Origin: Macrostomum hystrix
Lineage: Eukaryota; Animalia; Platyhelminthes
Reading direction: 5' to 3'
Assembly (NCBI GenBank): GCA_950097015.1
Contig: CATNEN010000032.1
Span: forward strand, 682,001 to 746,000
DNA length: 64,000 nucleotides
The position numbers and the translations under genes were made by a program. Shown here piece after piece: positions 1 through 12,397 of this stretch. The notes beneath the pieces were generated by a model. That model saw nothing but the letters and a program-made list of their open reading frames with translations, was not told where the DNA came from and made no database searches. Each line of letters starts with the position of its first letter. The first letter of the stretch is position 1.

Positions 1-420
1 CATCAGCATGGCTAAACTAGAGTTTGAATAATGGCTACACCAGAGTTTGAATCAAGGCTAAACCAGAGTCTGAATCATGGCTAAACCAGAGTTTGAATCA
101 TGGCTAAACCAGACTTTGAATCATAGCCAACCAGAGTTTGAATCTTGGCTAAACCAGAGTTTCAATCATGGCTAACCCAGCGTTTGAATCATGGCTAAAC
201 CAGAGTTTGAATCATGGCAAAAACCGAGTTTCAATCATGGCTAACCCAGCGTTTGAATCATGGCTAAACCAGAGTTTGAATCTTGGCTAAACCAGAGTTT
301 GAATCATAGCCAACCAGAGTCTGAATCATGGCAAAACGAGAGTTTGAATCATAGCCCACCAGGGTTTAAAACATGGCGAAACCTGAGTTTGAATCTTGGC
401 TAACCCAGCGTTTGAAAAAT
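1..420. repeat. Degenerate ~23-bp minisatellite (ggctaaaccagagtttgaatcat)n
   Basis: Unit visibly reiterated from the window start to ~420 with point variants. Confidence 0.9.
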
Positions 421-1253: not shown

Positions 1254-2022
1254 TTCAACATTTACAATGATTTTGCTACAATTTATTCAAATAACTGTGC
1301 AAGAAGTTTAAAAATTTAGCTTACCCTTACATGCTGGCTGCTGCCATCGCCAAGCTCCAAGCTCAAGTAATAGCCAGGACTTATAAATATAGGTAGAGGC
1401 GAGCTAAAAGAAAGTTCTAGTTGAGACTTGAGTACATCCCTTGTAAAGCAAGGCAGCGCGGAAAGAAAGCGGGGGTTGTTGAATGTATTTCATTCTCTCC
1501 TTCATCGAATGCACGCAAAAAATTACAGTATTGCACTTGATACATAAATATGGCCTCTCCAATCTCAAAGCACACTGTCAGTGCTTAAATTGCGCTGCGA
1601 CAGGTTAAATATAAGTAGGCACATGCGCAATCTAGTATATAGAATTCCCTCTCTATGGAAACCCTAGCTAGCTCGTTGCACACACTGTACAATACAAAAG
1701 CCTGCTTGCATTTTCACAATACAACACAATTATTAGCTTCGTCATTGCCTAAAGACGGAATGTTAGAAAAGCCTTGGGTTTTATGGGTTATGAATGAAAA
1801 TAATTATATAATGTATAATTCGGTCGCAGCATTCAGAGCTAAAACGCACTGATTTGATATCAAGTTTGATACAGAGCAAAAACATTCAAAGCACGTCTAG
1901 TTTATATCGCAAAAGGTAATAAAACTCAAACTTCAGCATGCGGTAACGCATTTACCACACAGATCACAAGATCCATTTTGATTACAGCGAGTCACAAAAA
2001 TTTAATTCAAAGTTTTTAAGCC

Positions 2023-3822
2023 ATGAAAAGCCAGTTAAATAAATCACAATTTGTCACTGCGTCCTTGATGCTGACTCTGCAGCTTTCAACGGCCCTATCA
2101 GCGACCACTGAGTTTCAGTGCCGAGACGCAGATGGCACGCCACTGGACTGGTTCGCGCTGCTCAAGCAGCCAGAGAGCTCAGAGTACGCATTTGTCAGCT
2201 CCAGCAATCCGAACTCGTGGACTCAGCCGGATGACTCAGACTTGACCAAAAGCGGTCCCGTGTTTGCCACCGTCAGCCAGGCGCTGTCCGGCTCGCCTGC
2301 TGCCGGCTCCGCCGACGTCCTTGCGGCATATAATGATGAGCCACCACCAGGGATCGATAAGTCATCATCGAGTCCATTGAGCAGCATCATCTCTGGCCAC
2401 ATGAAGGGCCTCGTAGCTCTGACGGCTGGTCGGCGAGGCTTCTGGTTGATCCACAGCGTTCCGAATTTCCCAGACATTAGCCTTGAGCATTTCAACTATG
2501 CAACCAAAGGCTTAAAGTACGGCCAGAGCTTTCTTTGCCTGACTGTCAACAGCTCGGCGGTGGCTGAAGACATCGGCAAGCAGCTGTTCGCCTCGCACCC
2601 CGATCTCTACAGCATCAGCGTGAGCGCCACCGCCGCCGCGACCTGGCCCAGCTGGGTCGACCTGAAGAAGAAAAAGACTCCACCGACAAGTCTGCTCAAC
2701 TCCACAGTCAGGTTGATGACTTCGGGCGGTCTCTCTGTACTCCATCTGGCCAAGTCTCCTCACCTGAAACAGGACCTGTATGCGTATCTGCTGGCTGATC
2801 AGCTGAACTCCAGCATCCAGGTGAGCGTGCATCCTTGCGTGCATCAAGTTTTTAAAAAATACTTTTGCGTGAGTGGCAACTATATTTCGTAAAGTTGTAA
2901 CAAAATTAATTACACGATTTGTTTTATAAAAGTTGATATATATGATCGACTAGGTGGTTAATTATTTGACTATTATGTCGGCAGGTGGAAACGTGGCAGC
3001 ACGGAGAGCGACTGTTGAACTCGACCTGCGGCAGGCGCTACAATGTCACAAAGGTGCTGCGGGTTCGCATCGGAAACAAGCAGCTGGCCGAGTTTCCATC
3101 AACCAGCGACCACTCGAAGTGGTGCGTAACAGTCGGAGCAGGCGGCTGGCCGCACGTGTGCATCGGCGACATGAACCGGGCGGAGACGCAGTTCCGGCGA
3201 GGCGGCGGCATCGCGTGCGTCGGCCTTCCAGCGCTGCACAGACTGTTCAAAGCGGCCGCGCTCAGTGACCAGGTAGTTTTAGTTGCACTTTTGGAACCTA
3301 CAAAATCTATTAAAACCTATGTCATTCTCAAGCAGAATTAACCTTTTAAGGTACAGAGGTGCAGTTTGTTTATCTCCCATTTCACTTTTTACCGATATTT
3401 GTCTTTTATTTGATTGGTTGATCTTAGAGAATATATATTCAACCTTCTTAGACACCTCAATCTATTTTAGATGACGTACAAAGAGGCAAGTTTCTATGCT
3501 AATTCCAATCCAATCAGCTTGCTTCGCTTATTTTGTATCATGTTCTTCTACTATTTAAGGAATATTTTGAGCATTAATTTGACTAAACCTTTCGCAGGCC
3601 TGCAACAGAGGGAACAGCGACTTTAAAGTGAGCAGCGTTTTCACTCAGCTGCTGCTGGTTTTTTACAACTGGGCCATTGTGGCAGTGCTGTGCGCTGCTG
3701 CCTGCACGATTCTCTTAGCGGACCTGCTCATCTGCCTGGTCCAGGCTCGAGCAAGGCGGCTTCAGAAGGGAGCGGTACGACCTTCCAGCACCTTCGGGGG
3801 CTGGGGATATCGGGTCCTGTGA
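2023..3822 (+). CDS. DNASE2: Deoxyribonuclease II family protein, paralogue A, with predicted C-terminal TM helix and GYRVL tail
   Basis: Exons 2023-2820, 2985-3272, 3598-3822, with GT-AG phase-0 introns that keep frame. Signal peptide, CRD..G.P.DWF..LK.P N-terminus, two HxK motifs (GHMKG, DHSKW), WLIHSVP.FP, YGQSFLC and CIGDMNR...Q.RRGGG are typical of DNase II. Confidence 0.92.
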
Positions 3823-4716
3823 CAGCTGACATTGTCTAGCTGTAATTACCGAATACAACCCCATGGAATTCTTTTAATATAGCTACGCGATACACAATGT
3901 ATAATTATGTAATCCATTTGGAATGTTAAGCTGTGGCGGCATTATAGCCAGTAGCCAGTACATACCGTAAACAATATAAAGAACTAGTTATTCGAGAATC
4001 AGTCGAGAACACGGCAAATATTTATCTTGTATATAAGCGGATCATTTCGTAGGATTTATTTCAAAACAGGTTGCTTGTATCATGCAGCCTCAAAAATATT
4101 TCTGGTTGGACGGGATAGGACATTGTATCGGACCCAGCGATCTAGATGTAATTGCCTGTACTTATGTTGTATGATTGCAGAATCAAATATCCAAGCTGAT
4201 ATCCAATCCATCGCTTTTAAAAAAATCTAAATACAAAGCCCTCCAATTACAAATATCTCGATATTTTTTTAACCATACTTTCCCTCAATTCATGAGTAGA
4301 GTTTCGCTTTGATACATGCTGCTTTATGGTGAAGTTTTTTACTAATTCATACATTCTTACAAGAATGATGGTGTGAGGAACTGGATGCAACTTTTGGAAT
4401 GCGCTTTGGATACTTCGCTTGTTGCATGGAAGCTGATAGCTGCGAGCGATAATCAGTGTCCTTTAAGTTACTGCCACTAAAACACGCTCGTACTAGTGCT
4501 TATACGTTAGCGCAGAAAAAACAGAAACTACTAACTCAAGGACCATCAGTAGTTACTTAGGCTCACTTAAATAGTCCTTGTATATGTATAGTAGTCTATT
4601 CAGATTTTATTGAATGGGCATTCTGTTGTTTCAGGGATTGTTGTGCAAAAATTCGAAACTGCTTCAGGCATCGGGGATGACCATATCAAGGATCTAGATT
4701 GAACTCACCGCTGATG

Positions 4717-5819
4717 GAATTCAGAGTGAGCTCTCGTTTCACGAACTCGGGGTAAGCTCTCGTATCATGAATTCGGAGTGAGCTCTCGTATCATGAATTC
4801 GGAGTGAGCTCTCGTATCATGAATTCGGAGTGAGCTCTCGCATCATGAATTCGGAGTGAGCTCTCGTATCATGAATTCGGAGTGAGCTCTCGTATCATGA
4901 ATTCGGAGTGAGCTCTCGTATCATGAATTCGGAGTGAGCTCTTGTTTGATTTACTCAGAGTGAGCTCTCGTTTCACGAACTCGGGGTAAGCTCTCGTATC
5001 ATGAATTCGGAGTGAGCTCTCGTATCATGAATTCGGAGTGAGCTCTCGTATCATGAATTCGGAGTGAGCTCTCGTATCATGAATTCGGAGTGAGCTCTTG
5101 TTTGATTTACTCAGAGTGAGCTCTCGTTTCACGAACTCGGGGTAAGCTCTCGTATCATGAATTCGGTGTGAGCTCTTGTATCATGAATTCGGAGTGAGCT
5201 CTTGTATCATGAATTCGGAGTGAGCTCTTGTATCATGAATTCGGAGTGAGCTCTCGTATCATGAATTCGGAGTGAGCTCTCGTATCATGAATTCGGAGTG
5301 AGCTCTCGTATCATGAATTCGGAGTGAGCTCTCGTATCATGAATTCGGAGTGAGCTCTCGTATCATGAATTCGGAGTGAGCTCTCGTTTGACTTACTCAG
5401 AGTGAGCTCTCGTATGAATTCGGAGTGAGCTCTCGTATGAATTCGGAGTGAGCTCTCGTATGAATTCGGAGTGAGCTCTCGTATGAATTCGGAGTGAGCT
5501 CTCGTATGAATTCGGAGTGAGCTCTCGTTTGACTTACTCAGAGTGAGCTCTCGTATGAATTCGGAGTGAGCTCTCGTATGAATTCGGAGTGAGCTCTCGT
5601 ATGAATTCGGAGTGAGCTCTCGTATGAATTCGGAGTGAGCTCTCGTATGAATTCGGAGTGAGCTCTCGTATGAATTCGGAGTGAGCTCTCGTATGAATTC
5701 GGAGTGAGCTCTCGTATCATGAATTCGGAGTGAGCTTTCGTATCATGATTTCGGAGTGAGCTCTCGTTTGACTTACTCAGAGTGAGCTCTCGTATCATGA
5801 ATTCAGTGTAAGCTCTCGT
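4717..5819. repeat. 26/23-bp minisatellite (ggagtgagctctcgtat[cat]gaattc)n
   Basis: More than 40 units; the 26-bp form switches to a 23-bp form after ~5400; periodic gtttgatttactcag variant units. Confidence 0.95.
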
Positions 5820-5959
5820 CTCGAGAAATAAGAGTTCACAATACCTACAGTTAATAACGGATAGTTGCCCAGGATTTGCCCTGGATCTAAGAATAAATCT
5901 GAAGGCAGACTTTCGAAAGCAGTCGAAGATGAATACGATTTAAATTTTTTACTGCCTTC

Positions 5960-8200
5960 TGAAGTCACCAACGACGCAGCTGTTCACTTAGACGGGTCAG
6001 GCCAGCGTGGCGAAAGAGAGCCGCGTTACTGATTCGCTCTTCGCTGGTCTTGAGGGTGGCGAGCGGCGGTGTGTACTGCGTTTATATGCTGTTCGAGCGA
6101 GTCCGTCAGCGTCCCGGTCTCGGTGTTGTACAGCAGGACGGTCTCAACAACCGCCTGGAACAGCGCCGCCCTCTGGCGATCAGGTAGGGCCTCGGACTGC
6201 AGGATCGCCCTCACAGAACGAAAGGCAGCCCAAGCAAGCGCCCGGCGACGCTGCAGATCTTCGCGGACGTCTATTACCAGACCACCGGGGTAGACGAACA
6301 ACTGAAAGCGCGGAAGCTCCGTCGCCTGGCCGTCAGCACCTCGGCAGAATATTTTTATCGATGTCGCCTCGATGTCGCCCTGCACGCAGAGCACGACGGT
6401 CTTCCCCGTATTGAACACCAGGCCGACGCTTTACTAGCTGGCGCTGGGCGGCCTTTACGGTTGAGGACAGCCGGGCGAGGTGATCGGCGAAGCCACGCAC
6501 GCTGAGCCGTCTTTCCGCTTGACGTCCACCCACGCGTCGGTGCAGAACGAAACCATCTTCGTCGTCGGTAAGCAGAGCATTATGAAGCACCCAGTCAAGC
6601 ACAAGGATGAACAGGAACGGCGCTAGCGTGTCCCCTTGGAGCACCGCGGAGGATGCATCTAAGGAGTTTGACAGGCCGTCCGACATCATCGCAGCTGCTC
6701 GATCGTAGCACAGTACAACGCCATGATGGCGGAGATCAGCTGCTCTGGCACATGATACGCACGGAGCACATGTAGGAGCGCAGCCCTCGCTACCGAGTCA
6801 ACGCCTTCATGAATTCAATAAAGACGACAAGCAGATCCAACTGGCGCGTACGCGCCTCCTCGATGATGCGGCGAATCTGCGTCGCTGTGCCGCGGTGGGG
6901 CCCAAACCCCTTCTGCTCATCCAGCACGGGTTACAACCGCGATAGCAGCATCCGCTTGAACGAATTCACGGCGCAGGATTGCAGATTTCTACGTGCTGGC
7001 TACCACACAGTGAATGCCCAGCGCCTCGAGGGCGGCTCGTCCGGACCCAGTGCTTTGCCGCTCGGTGTCTTCTGGGCGAGCATCACTACATCGGCAATGG
7101 TGACTGGCGCCACACTGAAGCTCTCCTGCTGCCGCTGCAGATCGACTGTCGCCAGAGCCTTCAGCTCGCGAGTAGGTTGCCTGCTCAGACGGAGCCTCTC
7201 CGCTTCTCCCTCGCTTGCTGAATCGCGAGGTACGAGCGCGGCGGCTCGTACTGCGGCACTCACGTCCACGTACTCAGCGCCTCCACGCTTGCCGCCGAGC
7301 GCAGTGATGAAAGCCCTAGCAAATCAGCGGTGCGTCCCGGCGTCTTTGAGGGCGCGGTAGTAACACCGCGGTGACCGCTTCGGCGGACGGTAGAGCGAAT
7401 CGCGTCGTTCGAGGTCGCAGACGAGGAGCTGATGACCGGACTGCAGAGCCAGCGACGTGATGGCGCGGCAGTTGAAAATTGCAGTTCCAGTTCTCGGAAG
7501 CACACGAGCACGTGGTCTAGCTGTGCCAGCCTCCTCGTAGCAAACCGGCCGCGCGCATTCCGCTGCCTCCGCTTGCAGCCCACGAAAGTCGCAAGCCTGC
7601 TGGGTGGCTTGCGGAAGCGGGTGTTGGCCGATATCCTGCCGCTCCTGGTAGTCTTCTAGCGCTTGAGTGTTACCGTTCTCGTGGGGCGTCACAAACAGGG
7701 ACCGCTCGGACCTGCGTGGAATTGCGTTTAGGTCTCTGAGGACGACCATTGTGTCGCGCTGCGCCGTTTCCTCCATGCGCACAGACAGCTGCTCGAAGAA
7801 GTTCTGAGCCCCATCCGGGAGGGTGGCAGGGGGTGCGACAACACAGAACAGGCGAGCTTTCCGGCCGCGAAGCTGGACGTCTACCGGAAGGATCCGGGGG
7901 GACTCGGCTCTGATAGACACCTCTTGACTCCTGAAGTGCGATGGCGTCACAGCTGAGGTCGAGCGCTAGCTTCGCCAGCAACCCTATCCACCAGGCGGCC
8001 TTGAGAGTGCAACAGCTCAGCGTCCGGACTCGAAGTGTGCGCTGTGGTAGAGCTGGGGCTCAGTGTAGGTGAGTCTCACGGCGCCACCCGGAATACTCAG
8101 ATGGACTGGCTTGGCAGCAGTGAAGCGCGGTTCACCGTCTTGACGATGAGGAGGTCGCGGCATCTATCTGCTCCGGGGTGCAAAAGATAAAGACTGCAAA
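5960..8200 (-). mobile_element. Decayed non-LTR retrotransposon (APE endonuclease + RT), RTE-like
   Basis: Frameshifted fragments: endonuclease (VVLRDLNA ~ GDLNA, ENG), RT motif VLQGDTLAPFLFILVLDWVL, degenerate FADHL for YADD, and C-terminal VETVLLYN.ET.T. Clade and ends are approximate. Confidence 0.8.
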
Positions 8201-8523
8201 TAGATTTAGACAGTGCTTTTGTGAGCTTCAGTGAATGCACACTCGCAGTATACGACCTACACTTCAAACGTGACAGTCTTGTTACATCTTTGAAACATTC
8301 GAGAATTCAAATTGTGCAAGCAGTCATTGTCGCAATTTGCGTGAAACTGCGAAATTAAAGGCTGTACAAACAGATCAAATCTCTAAAATTCAACAGCCCA
8401 CATCGGCCGGCTCGCTAGCCCAGTGCAGTCCTTGGTATGTGTGAATTTAATTGCAAGGCTGCTACAATTCTCTGTAGGTTGATAAGAAGGATACACACAT
8501 AAGCAAAGCCAGCCGCTTGTGAC

Positions 8524-8531
8524 TATAAAAA
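8524..8531 (+). promoter_or_regulatory. Candidate TATA box of DNase II paralogue B
   Basis: tataaaaa ~130 bp upstream of the ATG at 8656. Motif match only. Confidence 0.35.
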
Positions 8532-8655
8532 TAGCCTAGCGTAGAGCAGCGAAAATTAGTAACTGGCACATGAAACTGAAGCGTTTCAAGTCAACAGCTG
8601 CCAGCTCAACCATCCCATCCAATCCAGGCTGTCAAGAAGTGCAGCGCTTGAAATT

Positions 8656-10336
8656 ATGAGAACCCCGACGATGCCATTGTTCATCTCTCTGTTATTGCTG
8701 CTGACTCTGCAGCTTTCATCGGCCCTATCAGCGACCACTGAGTTTCAGTGCCGAGACGCAGATGGTACGCCACTGGACTGGTTCGCGCTGCTCAAGCAGC
8801 CAGAGAGCTCAGAGTACGCATTTGTCAGCTCCAGCAATCCGAACTCGTGGACTCAGCCGGATGACTCAGACTTGACCAAAAGCGGTCCCGTGTTTGCCAC
8901 CGTCAGCCAGGCGCTGTCCGGCTCGCCTGCTGCCGGCTCCGCCGACGTCCTTGCGGCATATAATGATGAGCCACCACCAGGGATCGATAAGTCATCATCG
9001 AGTCCATTGAGCAGCATCATCTCTGGCCACATGAAGGGCCTCGTAGCTCTGACGGCTGGTCGGCGAGGCTTCTGGTTGATCCACAGCGTTCCGAAGTTCC
9101 CAGACATTAGCCTTGAGCATTTCAACTATGCAACCAAAGGCTTAAAGTACGGCCAGAGCTTTCTTTGCCTGACTGTCAACAGCTCGGCGGTGGCTGAAGA
9201 CATCGGCAAGCAGCTGTTCGCCTCGCACCCCGATCTCTACAGCATCAGCGTGAGCGCCACCGCCACCGCGACCTGGCCCAGCTGGGTCGACCTGAAGAAG
9301 AAAAAGACTCCACCGACAAGTCTGCTCAACTCCACAGTCAGGTTGATGACTTCGGGCGGTCTCTCTGTACTCCATCTGGCCAAGTCTCCTCACCTGAAAC
9401 AGGACCTGTATGCGTATCTGCTGGCTGATCAGCTGAACTCCAGCATCCAGGTGAGCGTGCATCCTTGCGTGCATCAAGTTTTTAAAAAATACTTTTGCGT
9501 GAGTGGCAACTATATTTCGTAAAGTTGTAACAAAATTAATTACACGATTTGTTTTATAAAAGTTGATATATATGATCGACTAGGTGGTTAATTATTTGAC
9601 TATTATGTCGGCAGGTGGAAACGTGGCAGCACGGAGAGCGACTGTTGAACTCGACCTGCGGCAGGCGCTACAATGTCACAAAGGTGCTGCGGGTTCGCAT
9701 CGGAAACAAGCAGCTGGCCGAGTTTCCATCAACCAGCGACCACTCGAAGTGGTGCGTAACAGTCGGAGCAGGCGGCCGGCCGCACGTGTGCATCGGCGAC
9801 ATGAACCGGGCGGAGACGCAGTTCCGGCGAGGCGGCGGCATCGCGTGCGTCGGCCTTCCAGCGCTGCACAGACTGTTCAAAGCGGCCGCGCTCAGCGACC
9901 AGGTAGTTTCAGTTGCACTTTTGGAACCTACATGCGCTGCACAACACACTAAACAAATGGATTCGTTCAGTCTATCTTTTTATCAAATTGAAAGCCCTAA
10001 TGTCTGAATGTGTTTTGCATTATTCTAACCGTGACGCACTAGTCCTGTAATTTACCTGGACCTCTCTTTAACTTGACCTAACTTAAGCTAGTACATCTTA
10101 TGAAACCATATTCGCAGGCTTGCAACAGAGCCACCTATGGCTGCCGACTACAAACTCAGGAACTACTGGCGGTCCTGTACAACTGGGTAATGGTGGCGGC
10201 GGTTTGCGCTGTAGTCTGCACCCTGGTGTCCGTGGGCCTGCTTCTGTGGCTGTCGCTGGCTCGAGTTAAGCGGCTTCGGCGCGGTGCGCTGCAACCTTCA
10301 TGTGGTAGAAGGAGTCAGGGATATCGTTTCCTTTGA
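8656..10336 (+). CDS. DNASE2: Deoxyribonuclease II family protein, paralogue B, with predicted C-terminal TM helix and GYRFL tail
   Basis: Exons 8656-9450, 9615-9902, 10118-10336. Same intron positions and phases and same catalytic motifs as paralogue A, with a different signal peptide and a diverged exon 3. Confidence 0.92.
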
Positions 10337-11341
10337 AGGCTGACATGAAGGCGGAACACCCGGTCTGATGCACTATCTGATCACAAAAATGGATTGTGAA
10401 AGCGACCCATAGGAATATGCTGCATGGTTAAGATAATTTTGTACAAATTTAATTGAAATTTTTCACACGCATCCTTAATTTCGCACTGTTACTAAATGTT
10501 TACTCTGCGTGCCTGTCAGTCAGTCATTCGGATTCCGGAACCGTTTTTGATACAGTTCGCTGTTTTGATACAGTTTTGATACAGTTTGATACATCAAACA
10601 TACAATGTTTGATGATGAAATTCACCTGGAAAATGCGCAATTTCTCGTATAATTGTCGATAAATGTTCTAATCTACTCGTGAGCCGCAGCATGCTCGTCT
10701 GATTAACATTTATGACGTAACTTTTACTCTCGTTGAATCTTGCTAAATGAATCAAATATACACAGGGAGTCAGCCGATTCTGATATATCAAAATGCAGAA
10801 AGCTTTGATAAATTCATTTTATGATGCTACAACTGCAGAGCAGTCATACGTGTCACCACTTTCACATCTAAACACTGACGTAAGCCCACGTGAATCTGAT
10901 AATATTGATAGCTGTTCGCAGCGGCGCGAGTAAACATAGACCCATGCTTATCAGACTGGAAGAGCTGCAAACAGCCGGAAATCAGGTTCCAATGAGACCT
11001 GCCTGCGATGCCAAGAATTTTCGTTAGATTAGTATATCGATGCGATATAAACAATGGACTGACTGGCACAAACACAGGAAATTAATAGGGAACTTTCAAT
11101 AGTTTCAGTTCTACAAAGCGGTGAAGTTGTATTGTGTATAATTACATTGTTGCAGCAAGTCGTTTGAATCATCGAAAGTGTAATCGAAATAGACTAGGTA
11201 GATGAATAGCCTATTTCAGCCTCCTAAATAGCTCATAGAATTCAATACGGGCAAGTCGTTCACCAAAATAATTAATGACTAGCTCCGAAATGATTGGATA
11301 ATTAAAAGCCTTTGCCTCTCGCAGAATGGCCACCTGTCCTA

Positions 11342-11770
11342 GAGAATCCACTGTCCCTCCCCAGCCTCAGGACTTTCAGCTATCGAATCCACTGTCCCTC
11401 CCCCAGCCTCAGGACTTTCAGCTAGCGAATCCACTGTCCCTCCCCCAGCCTCAGTACTTTCAGCAAGCGAATCCACTGTCCCTCCCCAGCCTCAGTACTT
11501 TCAGCTAGCGAATCCACTGTCCCTCCACAGCCTCAGGACTTTCAGCTAGCGAATCCACTGTCCCTCCCCAGCCTCAGTACTTTCAGCTAGCGAATCCACT
11601 GTCCCTCCCCCAGCCTCAGGACTTTCAGCTAGCGAATCCACTGTCCCTCCACAGCCTCAGGACTTTCAGCTAGCGAATCCACTGTCCCTCCCCAGCCTCA
11701 GTACTTTCCGCTAGCGAATCCACTGTCCCTCCCCAGCCTCAGTACTTTCCGCTAGCGAATCCACTGTCCA
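11342..11770. repeat. 42-bp minisatellite (gaatccactgtccctcccccagcctcaggactttcagctagc)n
   Basis: About 10 copies visible. Confidence 0.92.
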
Positions 11771-12397
11771 TCTCCATCAGTGCGTTCAGTTATATGGCAG
11801 TCTTCTTTGTACCCAATATCTCAATTCTCATGGATAAGAAACCCTTCCAGAAGCAAGGTTTAGAATTTAGAGAGAAATAATTTCAAAGGAAGCAGCGGTG
11901 ATACAACGGCATAGTTTACATTCATACTGAATCAATAGCAAAAGGAGAAAAATTTTACAATCAGAAAACGCCAAATGTGCTTTTGCAATTTGTCTATATT
12001 TAGTTATCCAAAAAGACAACAGAAGTTGAACTTTATTACTCACGAATCAGCGCCATCTGCTAGTAACTAGACAAACAGAAAGTGAGTAAACTGATACAAT
12101 GACACGAATTGTTGTTTAACCAAATATAGAATTTCATACTCGTAAAACTGATAAGCTCAAAGCTTATGCAGCTAGAATAGATTTTTAGACCGGTCTTATA
12201 CAGCAATTGTGATTTACATGACGCATGAAATGGGTATTCCTTATTACTATTTCTACTACTCACGGTGACCAGTTGCACCAGTAGTACTTAAAGCATTCAG
12301 TCTGTCTAACCTCCGCCACAAACTTGAAGCTGCAATCCCTGCATCCACTCGGGTAGTTTTTATGCTTTCCAAACTCGGCTTAGCAAATCTGTCCGAG

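What the first reader, a model, noticed from the sequence alone, without database searches (positions are those of the whole stretch)
2023..10336. Tandem DNase II genes predicted to be type I membrane proteins with LAMP-type GYxx-hydrophobic lysosomal tails
Seen: after the catalytic exons (...LSDQ), both paralogues have a phase-0 GT donor (3273; 9903) and a matching ttcgcAG acceptor (3597; 10117). These lead into an exon encoding ACNR, a ~25-30-aa hydrophobic stretch, a basic cluster (RARR / RVKRLRR) and a stop right after GYRVL or GYRFL. Exon 3 is otherwise strongly diverged, yet the helix, the positive-inside residues and the terminal GY-x-x-L are kept, which points to selection. Established: C-terminal GYxx-hydrophobic motifs are the AP-adaptor lysosomal signals of LAMP1/LAMP2/CD63, and the characterised DNase II enzymes I know (mammalian DNASE2/2B, C. 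elegans NUC-1, starfish plancitoxin) are soluble. Inference: a membrane-tethered, adaptor-sorted acid DNase, that is a mannose-6-phosphate-independent route for lysosomal or phagosomal DNA clearance. An ORF-only annotation would miss it.
Basis: partly seen in the sequence, partly recalled or inferred. Interest (0 to 1): 0.86.

Follow-up and report, generated by a model that had tools for sequence, protein, structure and literature searches.

The report
Membrane-anchored DNase II gene pair
A Macrostomum flatworm carries two neighbouring, expressed genes for the acid DNA-degrading enzyme DNase II that, unlike the studied soluble forms, end in a membrane anchor and a short tail with a tyrosine sorting motif; this is a modestly new build of a known enzyme whose cellular destination has not been tested.

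Summary
Both genes have three exons: A at 2023-2820, 2985-3272 and 3598-3822; B at 8656-9450, 9615-9902 and 10118-10336. Intron-free contigs from three public runs carry both exon 2-exon 3 junctions. Exon 3 is not optional, because its second codon is a cysteine conserved in 162 of 175 DNase II proteins. It then encodes a 31-33-residue hydrophobic helix, a basic cluster and a tail ending Y-R-[V/F]-L-stop.

The M. lignano orthologue, already a public gene model, has the same two phase-0 introns and ends YRIL. Exons 1-2 look "undiverged" only because a 1,238-bp gene-conversion tract homogenised them. Exon 3 dates from an old duplication, and both copies kept the anchor and motif.

A type I membrane topology is well supported. 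Lysosomal sorting is only inferred. The flatworm's own LAMP ends GYQSV. In the DNases, however, the tyrosine lies 20-23 residues from the membrane, against 8-10 in LAMPs, and that spacing argues against a strictly LAMP-type signal. Hallmarks of the mannose-6-phosphate pathway are present in the genome.

Predicted TM-anchored DNase II also occurs in a few protists, apparently independently, and I found no paper on it. Verdict: a real, new variant of a known kind, of moderate interest.

The parts
2023..2820 (+). Paralogue A exon 1. It encodes a signal peptide (about codons 1-24/27, nt 2023-2103) and the first DNase II half-domain with the catalytic H126/K128.
   Evidence: Pfam PF03265 E 3e-44. 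H and K are invariant in 174-175 of 175 relatives. Contigs cover it.
2821..2984 (+). Paralogue A intron 1: 164 nt, phase 0, GT..AG. It is 100% identical to B's intron 1.
   Evidence: The joint 2820->2985 is seen in runs X3, X4 and X5. Identity.
2985..3272 (+). Paralogue A exon 2: the second DNase II half-domain with H309/K311.
   Evidence: Pfam E 2e-23, profile positions 233-320 of 326; residue conservation.
3273..3597 (+). Paralogue A intron 2: 325 nt, phase 0, GTAGTT...TTCGCAG.
   Evidence: The joint 3272->3598 is seen in runs X3, X4 and X5, with zero contig depth over 3306-3527.
3598..3822 (+). Paralogue A exon 3. Parts: the family-conserved Cys364 (nt 3601-3603), a linker, the hydrophobic helix (nt 3649-3741), a 26-aa basic cytosolic tail (nt 3742-3819) ending YRVL (nt 3808-3819), and the stop (3820-3822).
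   Evidence: Contigs run from exon 2 through this exon into at least 280 nt of 3'UTR.
8656..9450 (+). Paralogue B exon 1, with a stronger signal peptide at nt 8656-8733.
   Evidence: Pfam E 4e-44. B-specific 5' letters appear as loose ends at 2065 in X3-X5. KD values.
9615..9902 (+). Paralogue B exon 2.
   Evidence: Pfam E 1.9e-23; 99.3% identical to A's exon 2.
9903..10117 (+). Paralogue B intron 2: 215 nt, phase 0, GTAGTT...TTCGCAG.
   Evidence: Contigs of X3, X4, X5 and X1 go from the end of exon 2 straight into the letters at 10119 onward. One X5 contig instead reads into this intron, so it is unspliced.
10118..10336 (+). Paralogue B exon 3. Parts: the conserved Cys, the hydrophobic helix (nt 10163-10261), a 24-aa basic tail (nt 10262-10333) ending YRFL (nt 10322-10333), and the stop (10334-10336).
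2065..3302 (+). Gene-conversion tract shared with 8695-9932: 8 differences in 1238 bp, ungapped. The flanks on both sides cannot be aligned.

Best explanation
Each gene encodes a catalytically intact acid DNase II built as a type I membrane protein. It has an N-terminal signal peptide, a glycosylatable luminal DNase II domain, a 10-15-residue linker, and one long transmembrane helix. A 23-26-residue basic cytosolic tail follows, and its last four residues are Y-R-[V/F/I]-L.

Shown here: the gene model, its expression, the conservation of the anchor and tail, and the hydrophobic helix.

Inferred: the terminal YxxPhi motif is read by the mu subunits of clathrin adaptors. The enzyme would then be pulled from the TGN and/or the cell surface into endosomes, lysosomes or phagosomes, probably in digestive phagocytes. 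There the luminal domain degrades DNA at acid pH, either while still tethered or after being clipped off. The latter is what happens to lysosomal acid phosphatase and PLD3.

The invariant Y-N-W and A-x-x-C-A-x-x-C face of the helix suggests helix-helix pairing. That would fit an enzyme that works as a dimer (dimerisation is recalled from the Burkholderia structure, not tested here).
For: - Splicing and expression. Joints 2820->2985 and 3272->3598 appear in three runs. The exon 2 -> B exon 3 continuation appears in four runs. Depth over both introns is zero. The run assemblies hold 39-48 Mb against a 220-Mb genome, so they behave as transcriptomes.
- Exon 3 completes the fold. Its Cys is conserved in 162 of 175 relatives, and the Pfam profile ends at that Cys in the orthologue.
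- Catalytic H/K pairs are intact.
- There are five N-x-S/T sequons, all in the luminal domain.
- The KD19 maximum is 2.67-3.16 in the C-terminal segment, and there is no other internal segment at or above 1.6.
- AlphaFold2 on the orthologue gives mean pLDDT 90.5, a single helix at 357-403 and a disordered end.
- The same three-exon structure and a YRIL end are found in M. lignano.
- Exon 3 nucleotide identity between A and B is 61%, against 43-48% for the flanking intron and UTR. dN/dS is 0.44-0.61, with invariant C, YNW, A..CA..C and Y-R-x-L-stop.
- The worm's own LAMP homologue ends GYQSV, and AP mu genes, including a near-identical AP-2 mu, are present. The signal type and its readers therefore exist in this species.
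Against: - There is no localisation, binding or activity data.
- The Tyr sits 20-23 residues from the membrane, which is not the LAMP spacing. In LAMP1, five extra residues diverted the protein into plasma membrane-endosome recycling (PMC2199866).
- YxxPhi motifs are degenerate and not predictive on their own (PMC2133128).
- Only three related tails are available. Three invariant columns among the last four has a chance probability of about 0.03-0.05 at the tail's overall rate of invariant columns (my estimate).
- No dedicated signal-peptide or TM predictor was available. Topology rests on hydropathy, the positive-inside rule, the sequons and AlphaFold.
- The runs are not on record as RNA.
Confidence: 0.6

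Rival explanations
1. It is a surface or gut-facing ecto-DNase. The protein would live mainly at the plasma membrane of gastrodermal or epidermal cells, and the distal YxxPhi would act as an endocytic, recycling or basolateral signal. DNA would then be digested at the cell surface and in early phagosomes rather than in mature lysosomes.
For: The Tyr is 20-23 residues from the membrane, which is the spacing typical of endocytic signals (my own knowledge). [quoted passage not shown] Virtually all YxxPhi signals mediate internalisation. A membrane-bound DNase of another family, DNaseX, acts at nascent phagocytic cups (PMC13649258).
Against: DNase II enzymes have acid pH optima (established knowledge). 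The motif is at the extreme C-terminus and follows Gly in A and B, features associated with lysosomal signals (my own knowledge). Nothing is known about expression site or localisation.
Confidence: 0.2
2. The anchor belongs only to a precursor. It would serve solely for delivery, and the luminal domain would be cut off in the linker after the conserved Cys. The working enzyme would then be an ordinary soluble lysosomal DNase II, as with lysosomal acid phosphatase and PLD3.
For: There is a low-confidence, poorly conserved 10-15-residue linker between the domain and the helix. There are precedents. PLD3 is made as a TM protein and processed to a soluble domain (PMC12684396). For acid phosphatase, only titles were seen here, in the reference list.
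Against: Seven invariant residues lie on one face of the TM helix. That is more conservation than a disposable anchor needs. No cleavage site can be recognised.
Confidence: 0.3
3. The terminal residues are not an adaptor signal. The conserved hydrophobic C-terminal pair (VL/FL/IL) could be a COPII ER-export signal, or the conservation could be chance. The TM protein's destination would then be set by other features.
For: Only three related sequences were available, and the statistical support is marginal. Di-hydrophobic C-terminal ER-export motifs exist (my own knowledge).
Against: Tyr and Arg at -4 and -3 are invariant while most of the tail has changed. The position of the stop is kept in all three tails.
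Confidence: 0.1
4. It is a gene-model artefact. Exon 3 would be a separate or non-coding feature, and the real proteins would end by read-through in intron 2.
For: One X5 contig reads from exon 2 into B's intron 2.
Against: Spliced contigs are seen in three to four runs and none enters A's intron 2. The family-conserved Cys is encoded by exon 3. The orthologue has an identical structure.
Confidence: 0.02

Closest known systems
Soluble lysosomal DNase II: Pfam PF03265; human DNASE2/DNASE2B, C. elegans NUC-1/CRN-6/CRN-7, and Burkholderia DNase II (PDB 5I3E/5UNB)
   Same: The full DNase II domain is present, with both H-x-K catalytic motifs and the conserved cysteines. The only solved relative found by sequence is 5I3E/5UNB, at E 5e-26. 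A signal peptide and sequons are also present.
   Different: After the last conserved Cys the flatworm proteins continue for about 70 residues into a TM helix and a cytosolic tail. Only about 6 of the 178 relatives examined have a TM helix plus tail.
Macrostomum lignano Mlig011103 gene models (PAA94095.1, PAA85566.1; UniProt A0A1I8GCS4 / A0A1I8G2N6)
   Same: This is the orthologue. It is 64% identical over exon 1, has identical intron positions and phases, and has a TM helix plus a tail ending YRIL.
   Different: It is a single gene at the locus seen, not a tandem pair. Lys rather than Gly precedes the Tyr. It is annotated only as 'hypothetical protein' or 'Deoxyribonuclease II', and I found no paper that mentions it.
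Lysosomal acid phosphatase (ACP2/LAP)
   Same: It works in the same way. LAP is a luminal acid hydrolase made as a type I membrane protein, carried to lysosomes by a Tyr-based tail signal independently of mannose-6-phosphate, and then clipped to a soluble form. This is from my own knowledge; only the titles were seen. Its signal, as I recall it, is G-Y-R-H-V, close to the G-Y-R-V/F-L found here.
   Different: The catalytic fold is unrelated (histidine acid phosphatase). The LAP Tyr is near the membrane and is not at the C-terminus (recalled, not checked here).
LAMP1/LAMP2, and this flatworm's own LAMP homologue (L011)
   Same: Both are type I proteins with a basic anchor after the TM helix and G-Y-x-x-Phi as the last residues. 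The worm's LAMP ends GYQSV.
   Different: The LAMP tail is 11-13 residues long with the Tyr at position 8-10. The DNase tails are 23-26 residues long with the Tyr at position 20-23. In LAMP1, spacing decides lysosomal delivery. LAMPs are not enzymes.
PLD3/PLD4 lysosomal exonucleases
   Same: They belong to the same PLD superfamily, are lysosomal nucleases, and are made as single-pass membrane proteins processed to a soluble luminal domain (PMC12684396).
   Different: They have type II topology with an N-terminal anchor. They are sorted by ubiquitin/ESCRT into intraluminal vesicles rather than by YxxPhi. They are exonucleases from a different family.
Predicted TM-anchored DNase II of protists: Hemimastix kukwesjijk EP00696_P008087, one further EukProt protein, and two JGI proteins
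   Same: Each has a complete PF03265 domain followed by one C-terminal TM helix and a cytosolic tail.
   Different: The tails are unrelated and lack a terminal YxxPhi. On a FastTree tree built from the domain alone they do not group with Macrostomum, and at least four changes of state are forced. This points to independent gains or repeated losses.

Membership tests
DNase II (Pfam PF03265) | Profile match above the curated cut-off over the whole domain | tested here: met
   Exon 1 scores 151.8 bits and exon 2 scores 83.4 bits against a cut-off of 23. The orthologue matches profile positions 1-326 of 326, with the last positions lying in exon 3.
DNase II (Pfam PF03265) | Two catalytic H-x-K motifs | tested here: met
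   H126/K128 and H309/K311 of A align to columns that are H or K in 173-175 of 175 relatives.
DNase II (Pfam PF03265) | Conserved cysteines, including the C-terminal one | tested here: met
   C33, C172, C281, C325 and C344 are conserved, as is C364, which is encoded by exon 3. These columns are Cys in 159-175 of 175 relatives.
DNase II (Pfam PF03265) | Entry into the secretory pathway through a signal peptide | tested here: inconclusive
   There is a hydrophobic N-terminus; the best 10-residue KD mean is 1.99 in A and 2.86 in B. The domain starts right after it, and there are five luminal sequons. No dedicated predictor was available.
DNase II (Pfam PF03265) | Cation-independent endonuclease activity at acid pH | not testable with these tools
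   This needs an enzyme assay.
Tyrosine-sorted lysosomal type I membrane proteins (LAMP/LAP type; a functional class) | A single C-terminal TM helix with positive residues on the cytosolic side | tested here: met
   KD19 is 2.67-3.16. The basic clusters ARARR, RVKRLRR and KLRSR follow the helix. AlphaFold predicts a single helix at 357-403 in the orthologue.
Tyrosine-sorted lysosomal type I membrane proteins (LAMP/LAP type; a functional class) | YxxPhi at the extreme C-terminus | tested here: met
   The tails end YRVL, YRFL and YRIL, each directly followed by the stop.
Tyrosine-sorted lysosomal type I membrane proteins (LAMP/LAP type; a functional class) | Glycine before the tyrosine | tested here: inconclusive
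   Gly is present in A and B, but M. lignano has Lys.
Tyrosine-sorted lysosomal type I membrane proteins (LAMP/LAP type; a functional class) | Tyrosine about 6-10 residues from the membrane | tested here: not met
   The Tyr is at tail position 23 in A, 21 in B and 20 in M. lignano (counted). The worm's own LAMP has it at position 10. The importance of spacing is shown in PMC2199866.
Tyrosine-sorted lysosomal type I membrane proteins (LAMP/LAP type; a functional class) | Tyr-dependent binding to AP mu subunits and lysosomal localisation | not testable with these tools
   A complete mu homology domain of this genome is split over exons and has no reference, so no complex job was sent.

The most novel reading that the evidence does not exclude
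Macrostomid flatworms deliver their main acid DNase to phagolysosomes as a dimerising, membrane-tethered enzyme sorted by a C-terminal YxxPhi signal. This would be a receptor-free route kept for a long time in two paralogues, even though the mannose-6-phosphate machinery is present. Membrane anchoring of DNase II would also have arisen independently several times in eukaryotes, which would imply a recurrent advantage to holding the nuclease on the phagosomal membrane.
Probability: 0.4. Interest if true: 0.6.

Novelty: new variant of a known kind. Interest (0 to 1): 0.45.

Why it matters
In the systems studied so far, DNase II is the main lysosomal DNase of phagocytes (PMC12684396), and to my knowledge all studied forms are soluble luminal enzymes. 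A naturally membrane-anchored version with a short, mutable sorting tail would be a second example, after acid phosphatase, of a soluble-type lysosomal hydrolase delivered as a type I membrane protein.

M. lignano is transgenic-ready (PMC5730564, seen), so the idea can be tested directly. The finding also bears on how animals that digest intracellularly route nucleases to phagosomes. It flags a small, unremarked set of TM-anchored DNase II proteins in protists.

The finding remains a domain-architecture variant of a well-known enzyme. No function has been shown, and it does not open a long-standing question.

Tried and rejected
- **More tails.** I searched the 5.8-billion-protein collection with the M. 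lignano tail region and with a three-tail alignment. Only the query itself came back, or nothing. No further Macrostomum tails could be added, so conservation rests on three sequences.
- **Literature.** I searched for TM or membrane-bound DNase II, for flatworm DNase II and for Mlig011103. Nothing on this architecture turned up. A planarian paper reports four DNase II isoforms without mentioning anchors. The acid phosphatase papers PMC552098 and PMC402045 are not held, so the LAP details come from memory.
- **The "no M6P pathway" idea.** I checked whether the worm might lack the M6P pathway, which would explain the anchor. This is rejected as stated. Stealth_CR2 and Man-6-P_recep matches are present. 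The absence of a CIMR match is uninformative, because the controls were silent.
- **Third copy.** I asked whether the third DNase II copy, on contig C2, hides a spliced TM exon. There is no GT donor at the homologous site and no suitable downstream ORF within 1.5 kb.
- **Intergenic ORFs.** The retroelement-like ORFs between the paralogues gave no Pfam hits at E <= 0.01.
- **Complex prediction.** No job was sent. A complete mu homology domain has no single reference, and Swiss-Prot references are limited to microbes.
- **Contig depth.** The depths of the A and B exon 3 contigs roughly add up to the depth of the shared exons. The tool warns that contig depth cannot rank parts of a gene, so I do not rely on this.

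Full report
**What is in the sequence**

The window holds two head-to-tail DNase II genes on the + strand. Building the spliced CDSs gives two gene models.
- Paralogue A has exons at 2023-2820, 2985-3272 and 3598-3822. The CDS is 1311 nt and encodes 436 aa.
- Paralogue B has exons at 8656-9450, 9615-9902 and 10118-10336. The CDS is 1302 nt and encodes 433 aa.

All four introns are phase 0 with GT..AG ends. The two second-intron acceptors share TTCGCAG. Exons 1 and 2 match Pfam DNase_II PF03265 at E 3e-44 and 2e-23. Exon 3 matches no family.

**Is exon 3 real?**

Three independent lines say yes.

The first is transcript evidence. One sequencing-run search found four runs of one study (organism C, 2020) that hold about 63% of the words of 2000-3900, and a 2024 run of another study (X1) that holds 26%. 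I laid the contigs of X3, X4, X5 and X1 on 1900-4100.
- Contigs cover the exons and both UTRs.
- Depth over both introns is zero.
- Two joints with GT..AG ends appear in all three organism-C runs: 2820->2985 and 3272->3598, after the tool's cut shift of +3.
- In X3, X4, X5 and X1, other contigs run to 3272/3273 and then continue with the first letters of B's exon 3, from 10119 on. B's junction 9902->10118 is therefore seen as well.
- B-specific 5' letters appear as loose ends at 2065, so both genes are expressed.
- One X5 contig reads into B's intron 2. This is unspliced RNA or a minor isoform.

The runs are not on record as RNA. Their whole assemblies hold 39-48 Mb against a 220-Mb genome and lack introns, so they behave as transcriptomes.

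The second line is fold completion. In an alignment of 175 DNase II proteins, the second codon of exon 3 (Cys364 in A) falls in a column that is Cys in 162 sequences. In the orthologue, the Pfam profile runs to its last position exactly there. A protein that ended by read-through in intron 2 would lack a family-conserved cysteine.

The third line is the orthologue. The nearest protein in 5.8 billion is M. lignano DNase II, at 64% identity over exon 1. Its accessions are UniProt A0A1I8GCS4/A0A1I8G2N6 and GenBank PAA94095.1 and PAA85566.1, locus Mlig011103. Mapping it on its contig gives three exons with phase-0 introns at the same two positions...IQ|VE... and ...DQ|PC.... Nothing in the collection matches at about 100%, so the window's genome is an unannotated Macrostomum relative.

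**What exon 3 encodes**

After the conserved Cys comes a 10-15-residue variable linker. It is followed by a hydrophobic stretch of 31 residues in A and 33 in B and M. lignano. Its Kyte-Doolittle 19-residue means are 2.67, 2.69 and 3.16, against the usual threshold of 1.6. It is the only such segment apart from the signal peptide.

Next come a basic cluster and a tail of 23-26 residues that ends YRVL, YRFL or YRIL, directly followed by the stop.

AlphaFold2 on the orthologue, using a 76-sequence alignment, gives mean pLDDT 90.5. It predicts a confident DNase II domain, a low-confidence linker at 347-356, one continuous helix at 357-403 and a disordered end that holds the motif.

Both catalytic H-x-K pairs are intact. 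Five N-x-S/T sequons all lie in the DNase domain. Signal peptide, luminal sequons, a single helix and positive charges after it together make a type I topology the straightforward reading. No dedicated predictor was available.

**Divergence and selection**

From 2065 to 3302 (B: 8695-9932) the two genes differ at 8 of 1238 ungapped positions, including a 100% identical intron 1. Both borders are sharp, and beyond them nothing aligns. This is a recent gene-conversion tract laid over an old duplication.

Outside the tract, exon 3 is 61% identical in nucleotides, against 43-48% for intron 2 and the flanks. The tails are 38-43% identical in protein among A, B and M. lignano. Synonymous divergence is near saturation (dS 0.9-1.3) and dN/dS is 0.44-0.61.

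Seventeen columns are invariant:
- the Cys;
- L-L and Y-N-W at the luminal end of the helix;
- A..CA..C in its middle, which gives small-xxx-small spacing on one helical face;
- L-L, an Ala and a Ser;
- Y, R and L of the terminal motif.

Both old paralogues and the sister species therefore kept the anchor, the charge cluster, the tail length and the terminal motif. With only three related tails, the statistical weight for the motif alone is modest, roughly p 0.03-0.05 by my estimate.

**How it most likely works**

The gene model, its expression, the membrane-anchor architecture and the conserved terminal YxxPhi are shown.

The next step is inferred. The tail would be read by adaptor mu subunits, and the enzyme would be carried to endosomes, lysosomes or phagosomes, where DNase II chemistry works.

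Two checks within the genome support the plausibility of this inference. The worm's own LAMP homologue ends ...GRRRHSSGGGYQSV, so a terminal GYxxPhi is in use in this species. Several mu-homology genes are also present, including an AP-2 mu whose N-terminal exon I recognise, from memory of the human sequence, as almost identical to it.

Against a strict "LAMP-type" reading, the Tyr is 20-23 residues from the membrane rather than 8-10. In LAMP1, deleting one residue or adding five nearly abolished lysosomal targeting and trapped the protein in recycling between the plasma membrane and endosomes (PMC2199866). Virtually all YxxPhi signals drive internalisation, only some additionally drive lysosomal targeting, and the motif alone is not predictive (PMC2133128).

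The route may therefore go through the cell surface, and a surface or early-phagosome role is a live rival. A membrane-bound DNase of a different family acting at phagocytic cups has just been described (PMC13649258).

Whether the enzyme stays tethered or is clipped off is open. PLD3 is clipped (PMC12684396), and so is acid phosphatase by my recollection. The conserved helix face argues for a working TM helix, perhaps a dimer interface.

The "M6P-independent" framing is not forced by the genome. A Stealth_CR2 (GNPTAB-like) locus and several Man-6-P_recep matches are present.

**Comparison with what is known**

By family these are DNase II proteins, and every sequence-testable criterion is met. 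By architecture they are unusual.
- Of 178 relatives examined (the best 150 of 2,258 representative hits, plus earlier hits), six have a C-terminal TM helix with a cytosolic tail. They are the M. lignano orthologue, Hemimastix kukwesjijk, one other EukProt protist, two JGI proteins and one doubtful Logan protein.
- On a domain-only FastTree tree, the Macrostomum trio is one clade. The protist TM forms are scattered among soluble forms, and at least four changes of state are forced. This is a rough tree, but it speaks for repeated gain or loss.
- The genome has one further DNase II, on contig C2. It is intronless, has a roughly 110-residue N-terminal extension, and has no terminal Cys and no anchor.
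- The only solved relative found by sequence is the Burkholderia enzyme 5I3E/5UNB.
- I found no paper that discusses a membrane-anchored DNase II.

The closest functional analogue is lysosomal acid phosphatase. The closest relative in superfamily terms with an anchor is PLD3/PLD4, which is type II and sorted by ESCRT.

**Verdict**

The type I membrane reading is well supported, at about 0.85. Adaptor-mediated endolysosomal delivery is a reasonable but untested inference, at about 0.6 for the whole statement.

The "LAMP-type" and "M6P-independent" labels go beyond the evidence. The architecture already sits, unremarked, in public M. lignano gene models.

I rate the finding as a new variant of a known kind, with interest 0.45.

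Noticed in passing
window 2065-3302 and 8695-9932: There is a sharp-edged gene-conversion tract between the two paralogues. It has 8 differences in 1238 ungapped bases and intron 1 is identical. The signal-peptide start, intron 2 and exon 3 lie outside it and cannot be aligned or are only 61% identical.
   Followed up: yes
L001:1162-2400 (G000:C2:175166-176404): This is the third DNase II gene of the genome. It is an intronless 412-aa ORF with a signal peptide, a Ser/Gln-rich N-terminal extension of about 110 aa and both H-x-K motifs. It ends ...ALPPLN without the family's terminal Cys and without a TM anchor. Its expression was not checked.
   Followed up: partly
L011:1206-1472 (-) (G000:C7, LAMP homologue): The last exon of the flatworm's LAMP homologue closely resembles the vertebrate LAMP1 TM region as I recall it. 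It ends in a 13-residue tail with GYQSV at the C-terminus. The canonical LAMP signal is therefore conserved in Macrostomum.
   Followed up: partly
exon 3 helices: window 3649-3741 and 10163-10261: Seven residues inside the TM helix are invariant among A, B and M. lignano. They are Y-N-W near the luminal end and A-x-x-C-A-x-x-C in the middle, with small-xxx-small spacing on one face. This is more conservation than a plain anchor needs and may mark a dimerisation or partner-binding face.
   Followed up: no
window 4717-5819; 6026-7950 (-): Between the two genes lie a 26-bp tandem array of about 44 copies at 90% match and a run of minus-strand ORFs that look like a decayed non-LTR retroelement. 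Pfam found nothing in those ORFs at E <= 0.01.
   Followed up: partly
window 1865-1874 and 10546-10584: The 10-mer TTTGATACAG occurs only four times in 64 kb, against 0.18 expected. One copy lies 158 bp upstream of A's ATG, and three lie in tandem about 210-250 bp downstream of B's stop. The motif thus brackets the gene pair. Its meaning is unknown.
   Followed up: partly
window 3833 (3'UTR of A): Contigs of runs X4 and X5 carry a 25-nt insertion after 3833 that the window and X3 lack. This is a 3'UTR length polymorphism among samples.
   Followed up: no
proteins P0020, P0036, P0032, P0013 (Caenorhabditis CRN-7-like DNase II): Several Caenorhabditis DNase II proteins end in a roughly 20-residue hydrophobic stretch with no cytosolic tail after it. 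This looks like a GPI signal or a tail-less anchor and, as far as I know, has not been discussed.
   Followed up: no
window 7-416, 425-585, 11339-11776: There are further tandem arrays: a 23-bp unit x18, an 18-bp unit x9 and a 41-bp unit x10.6. They flank the region.
   Followed up: no
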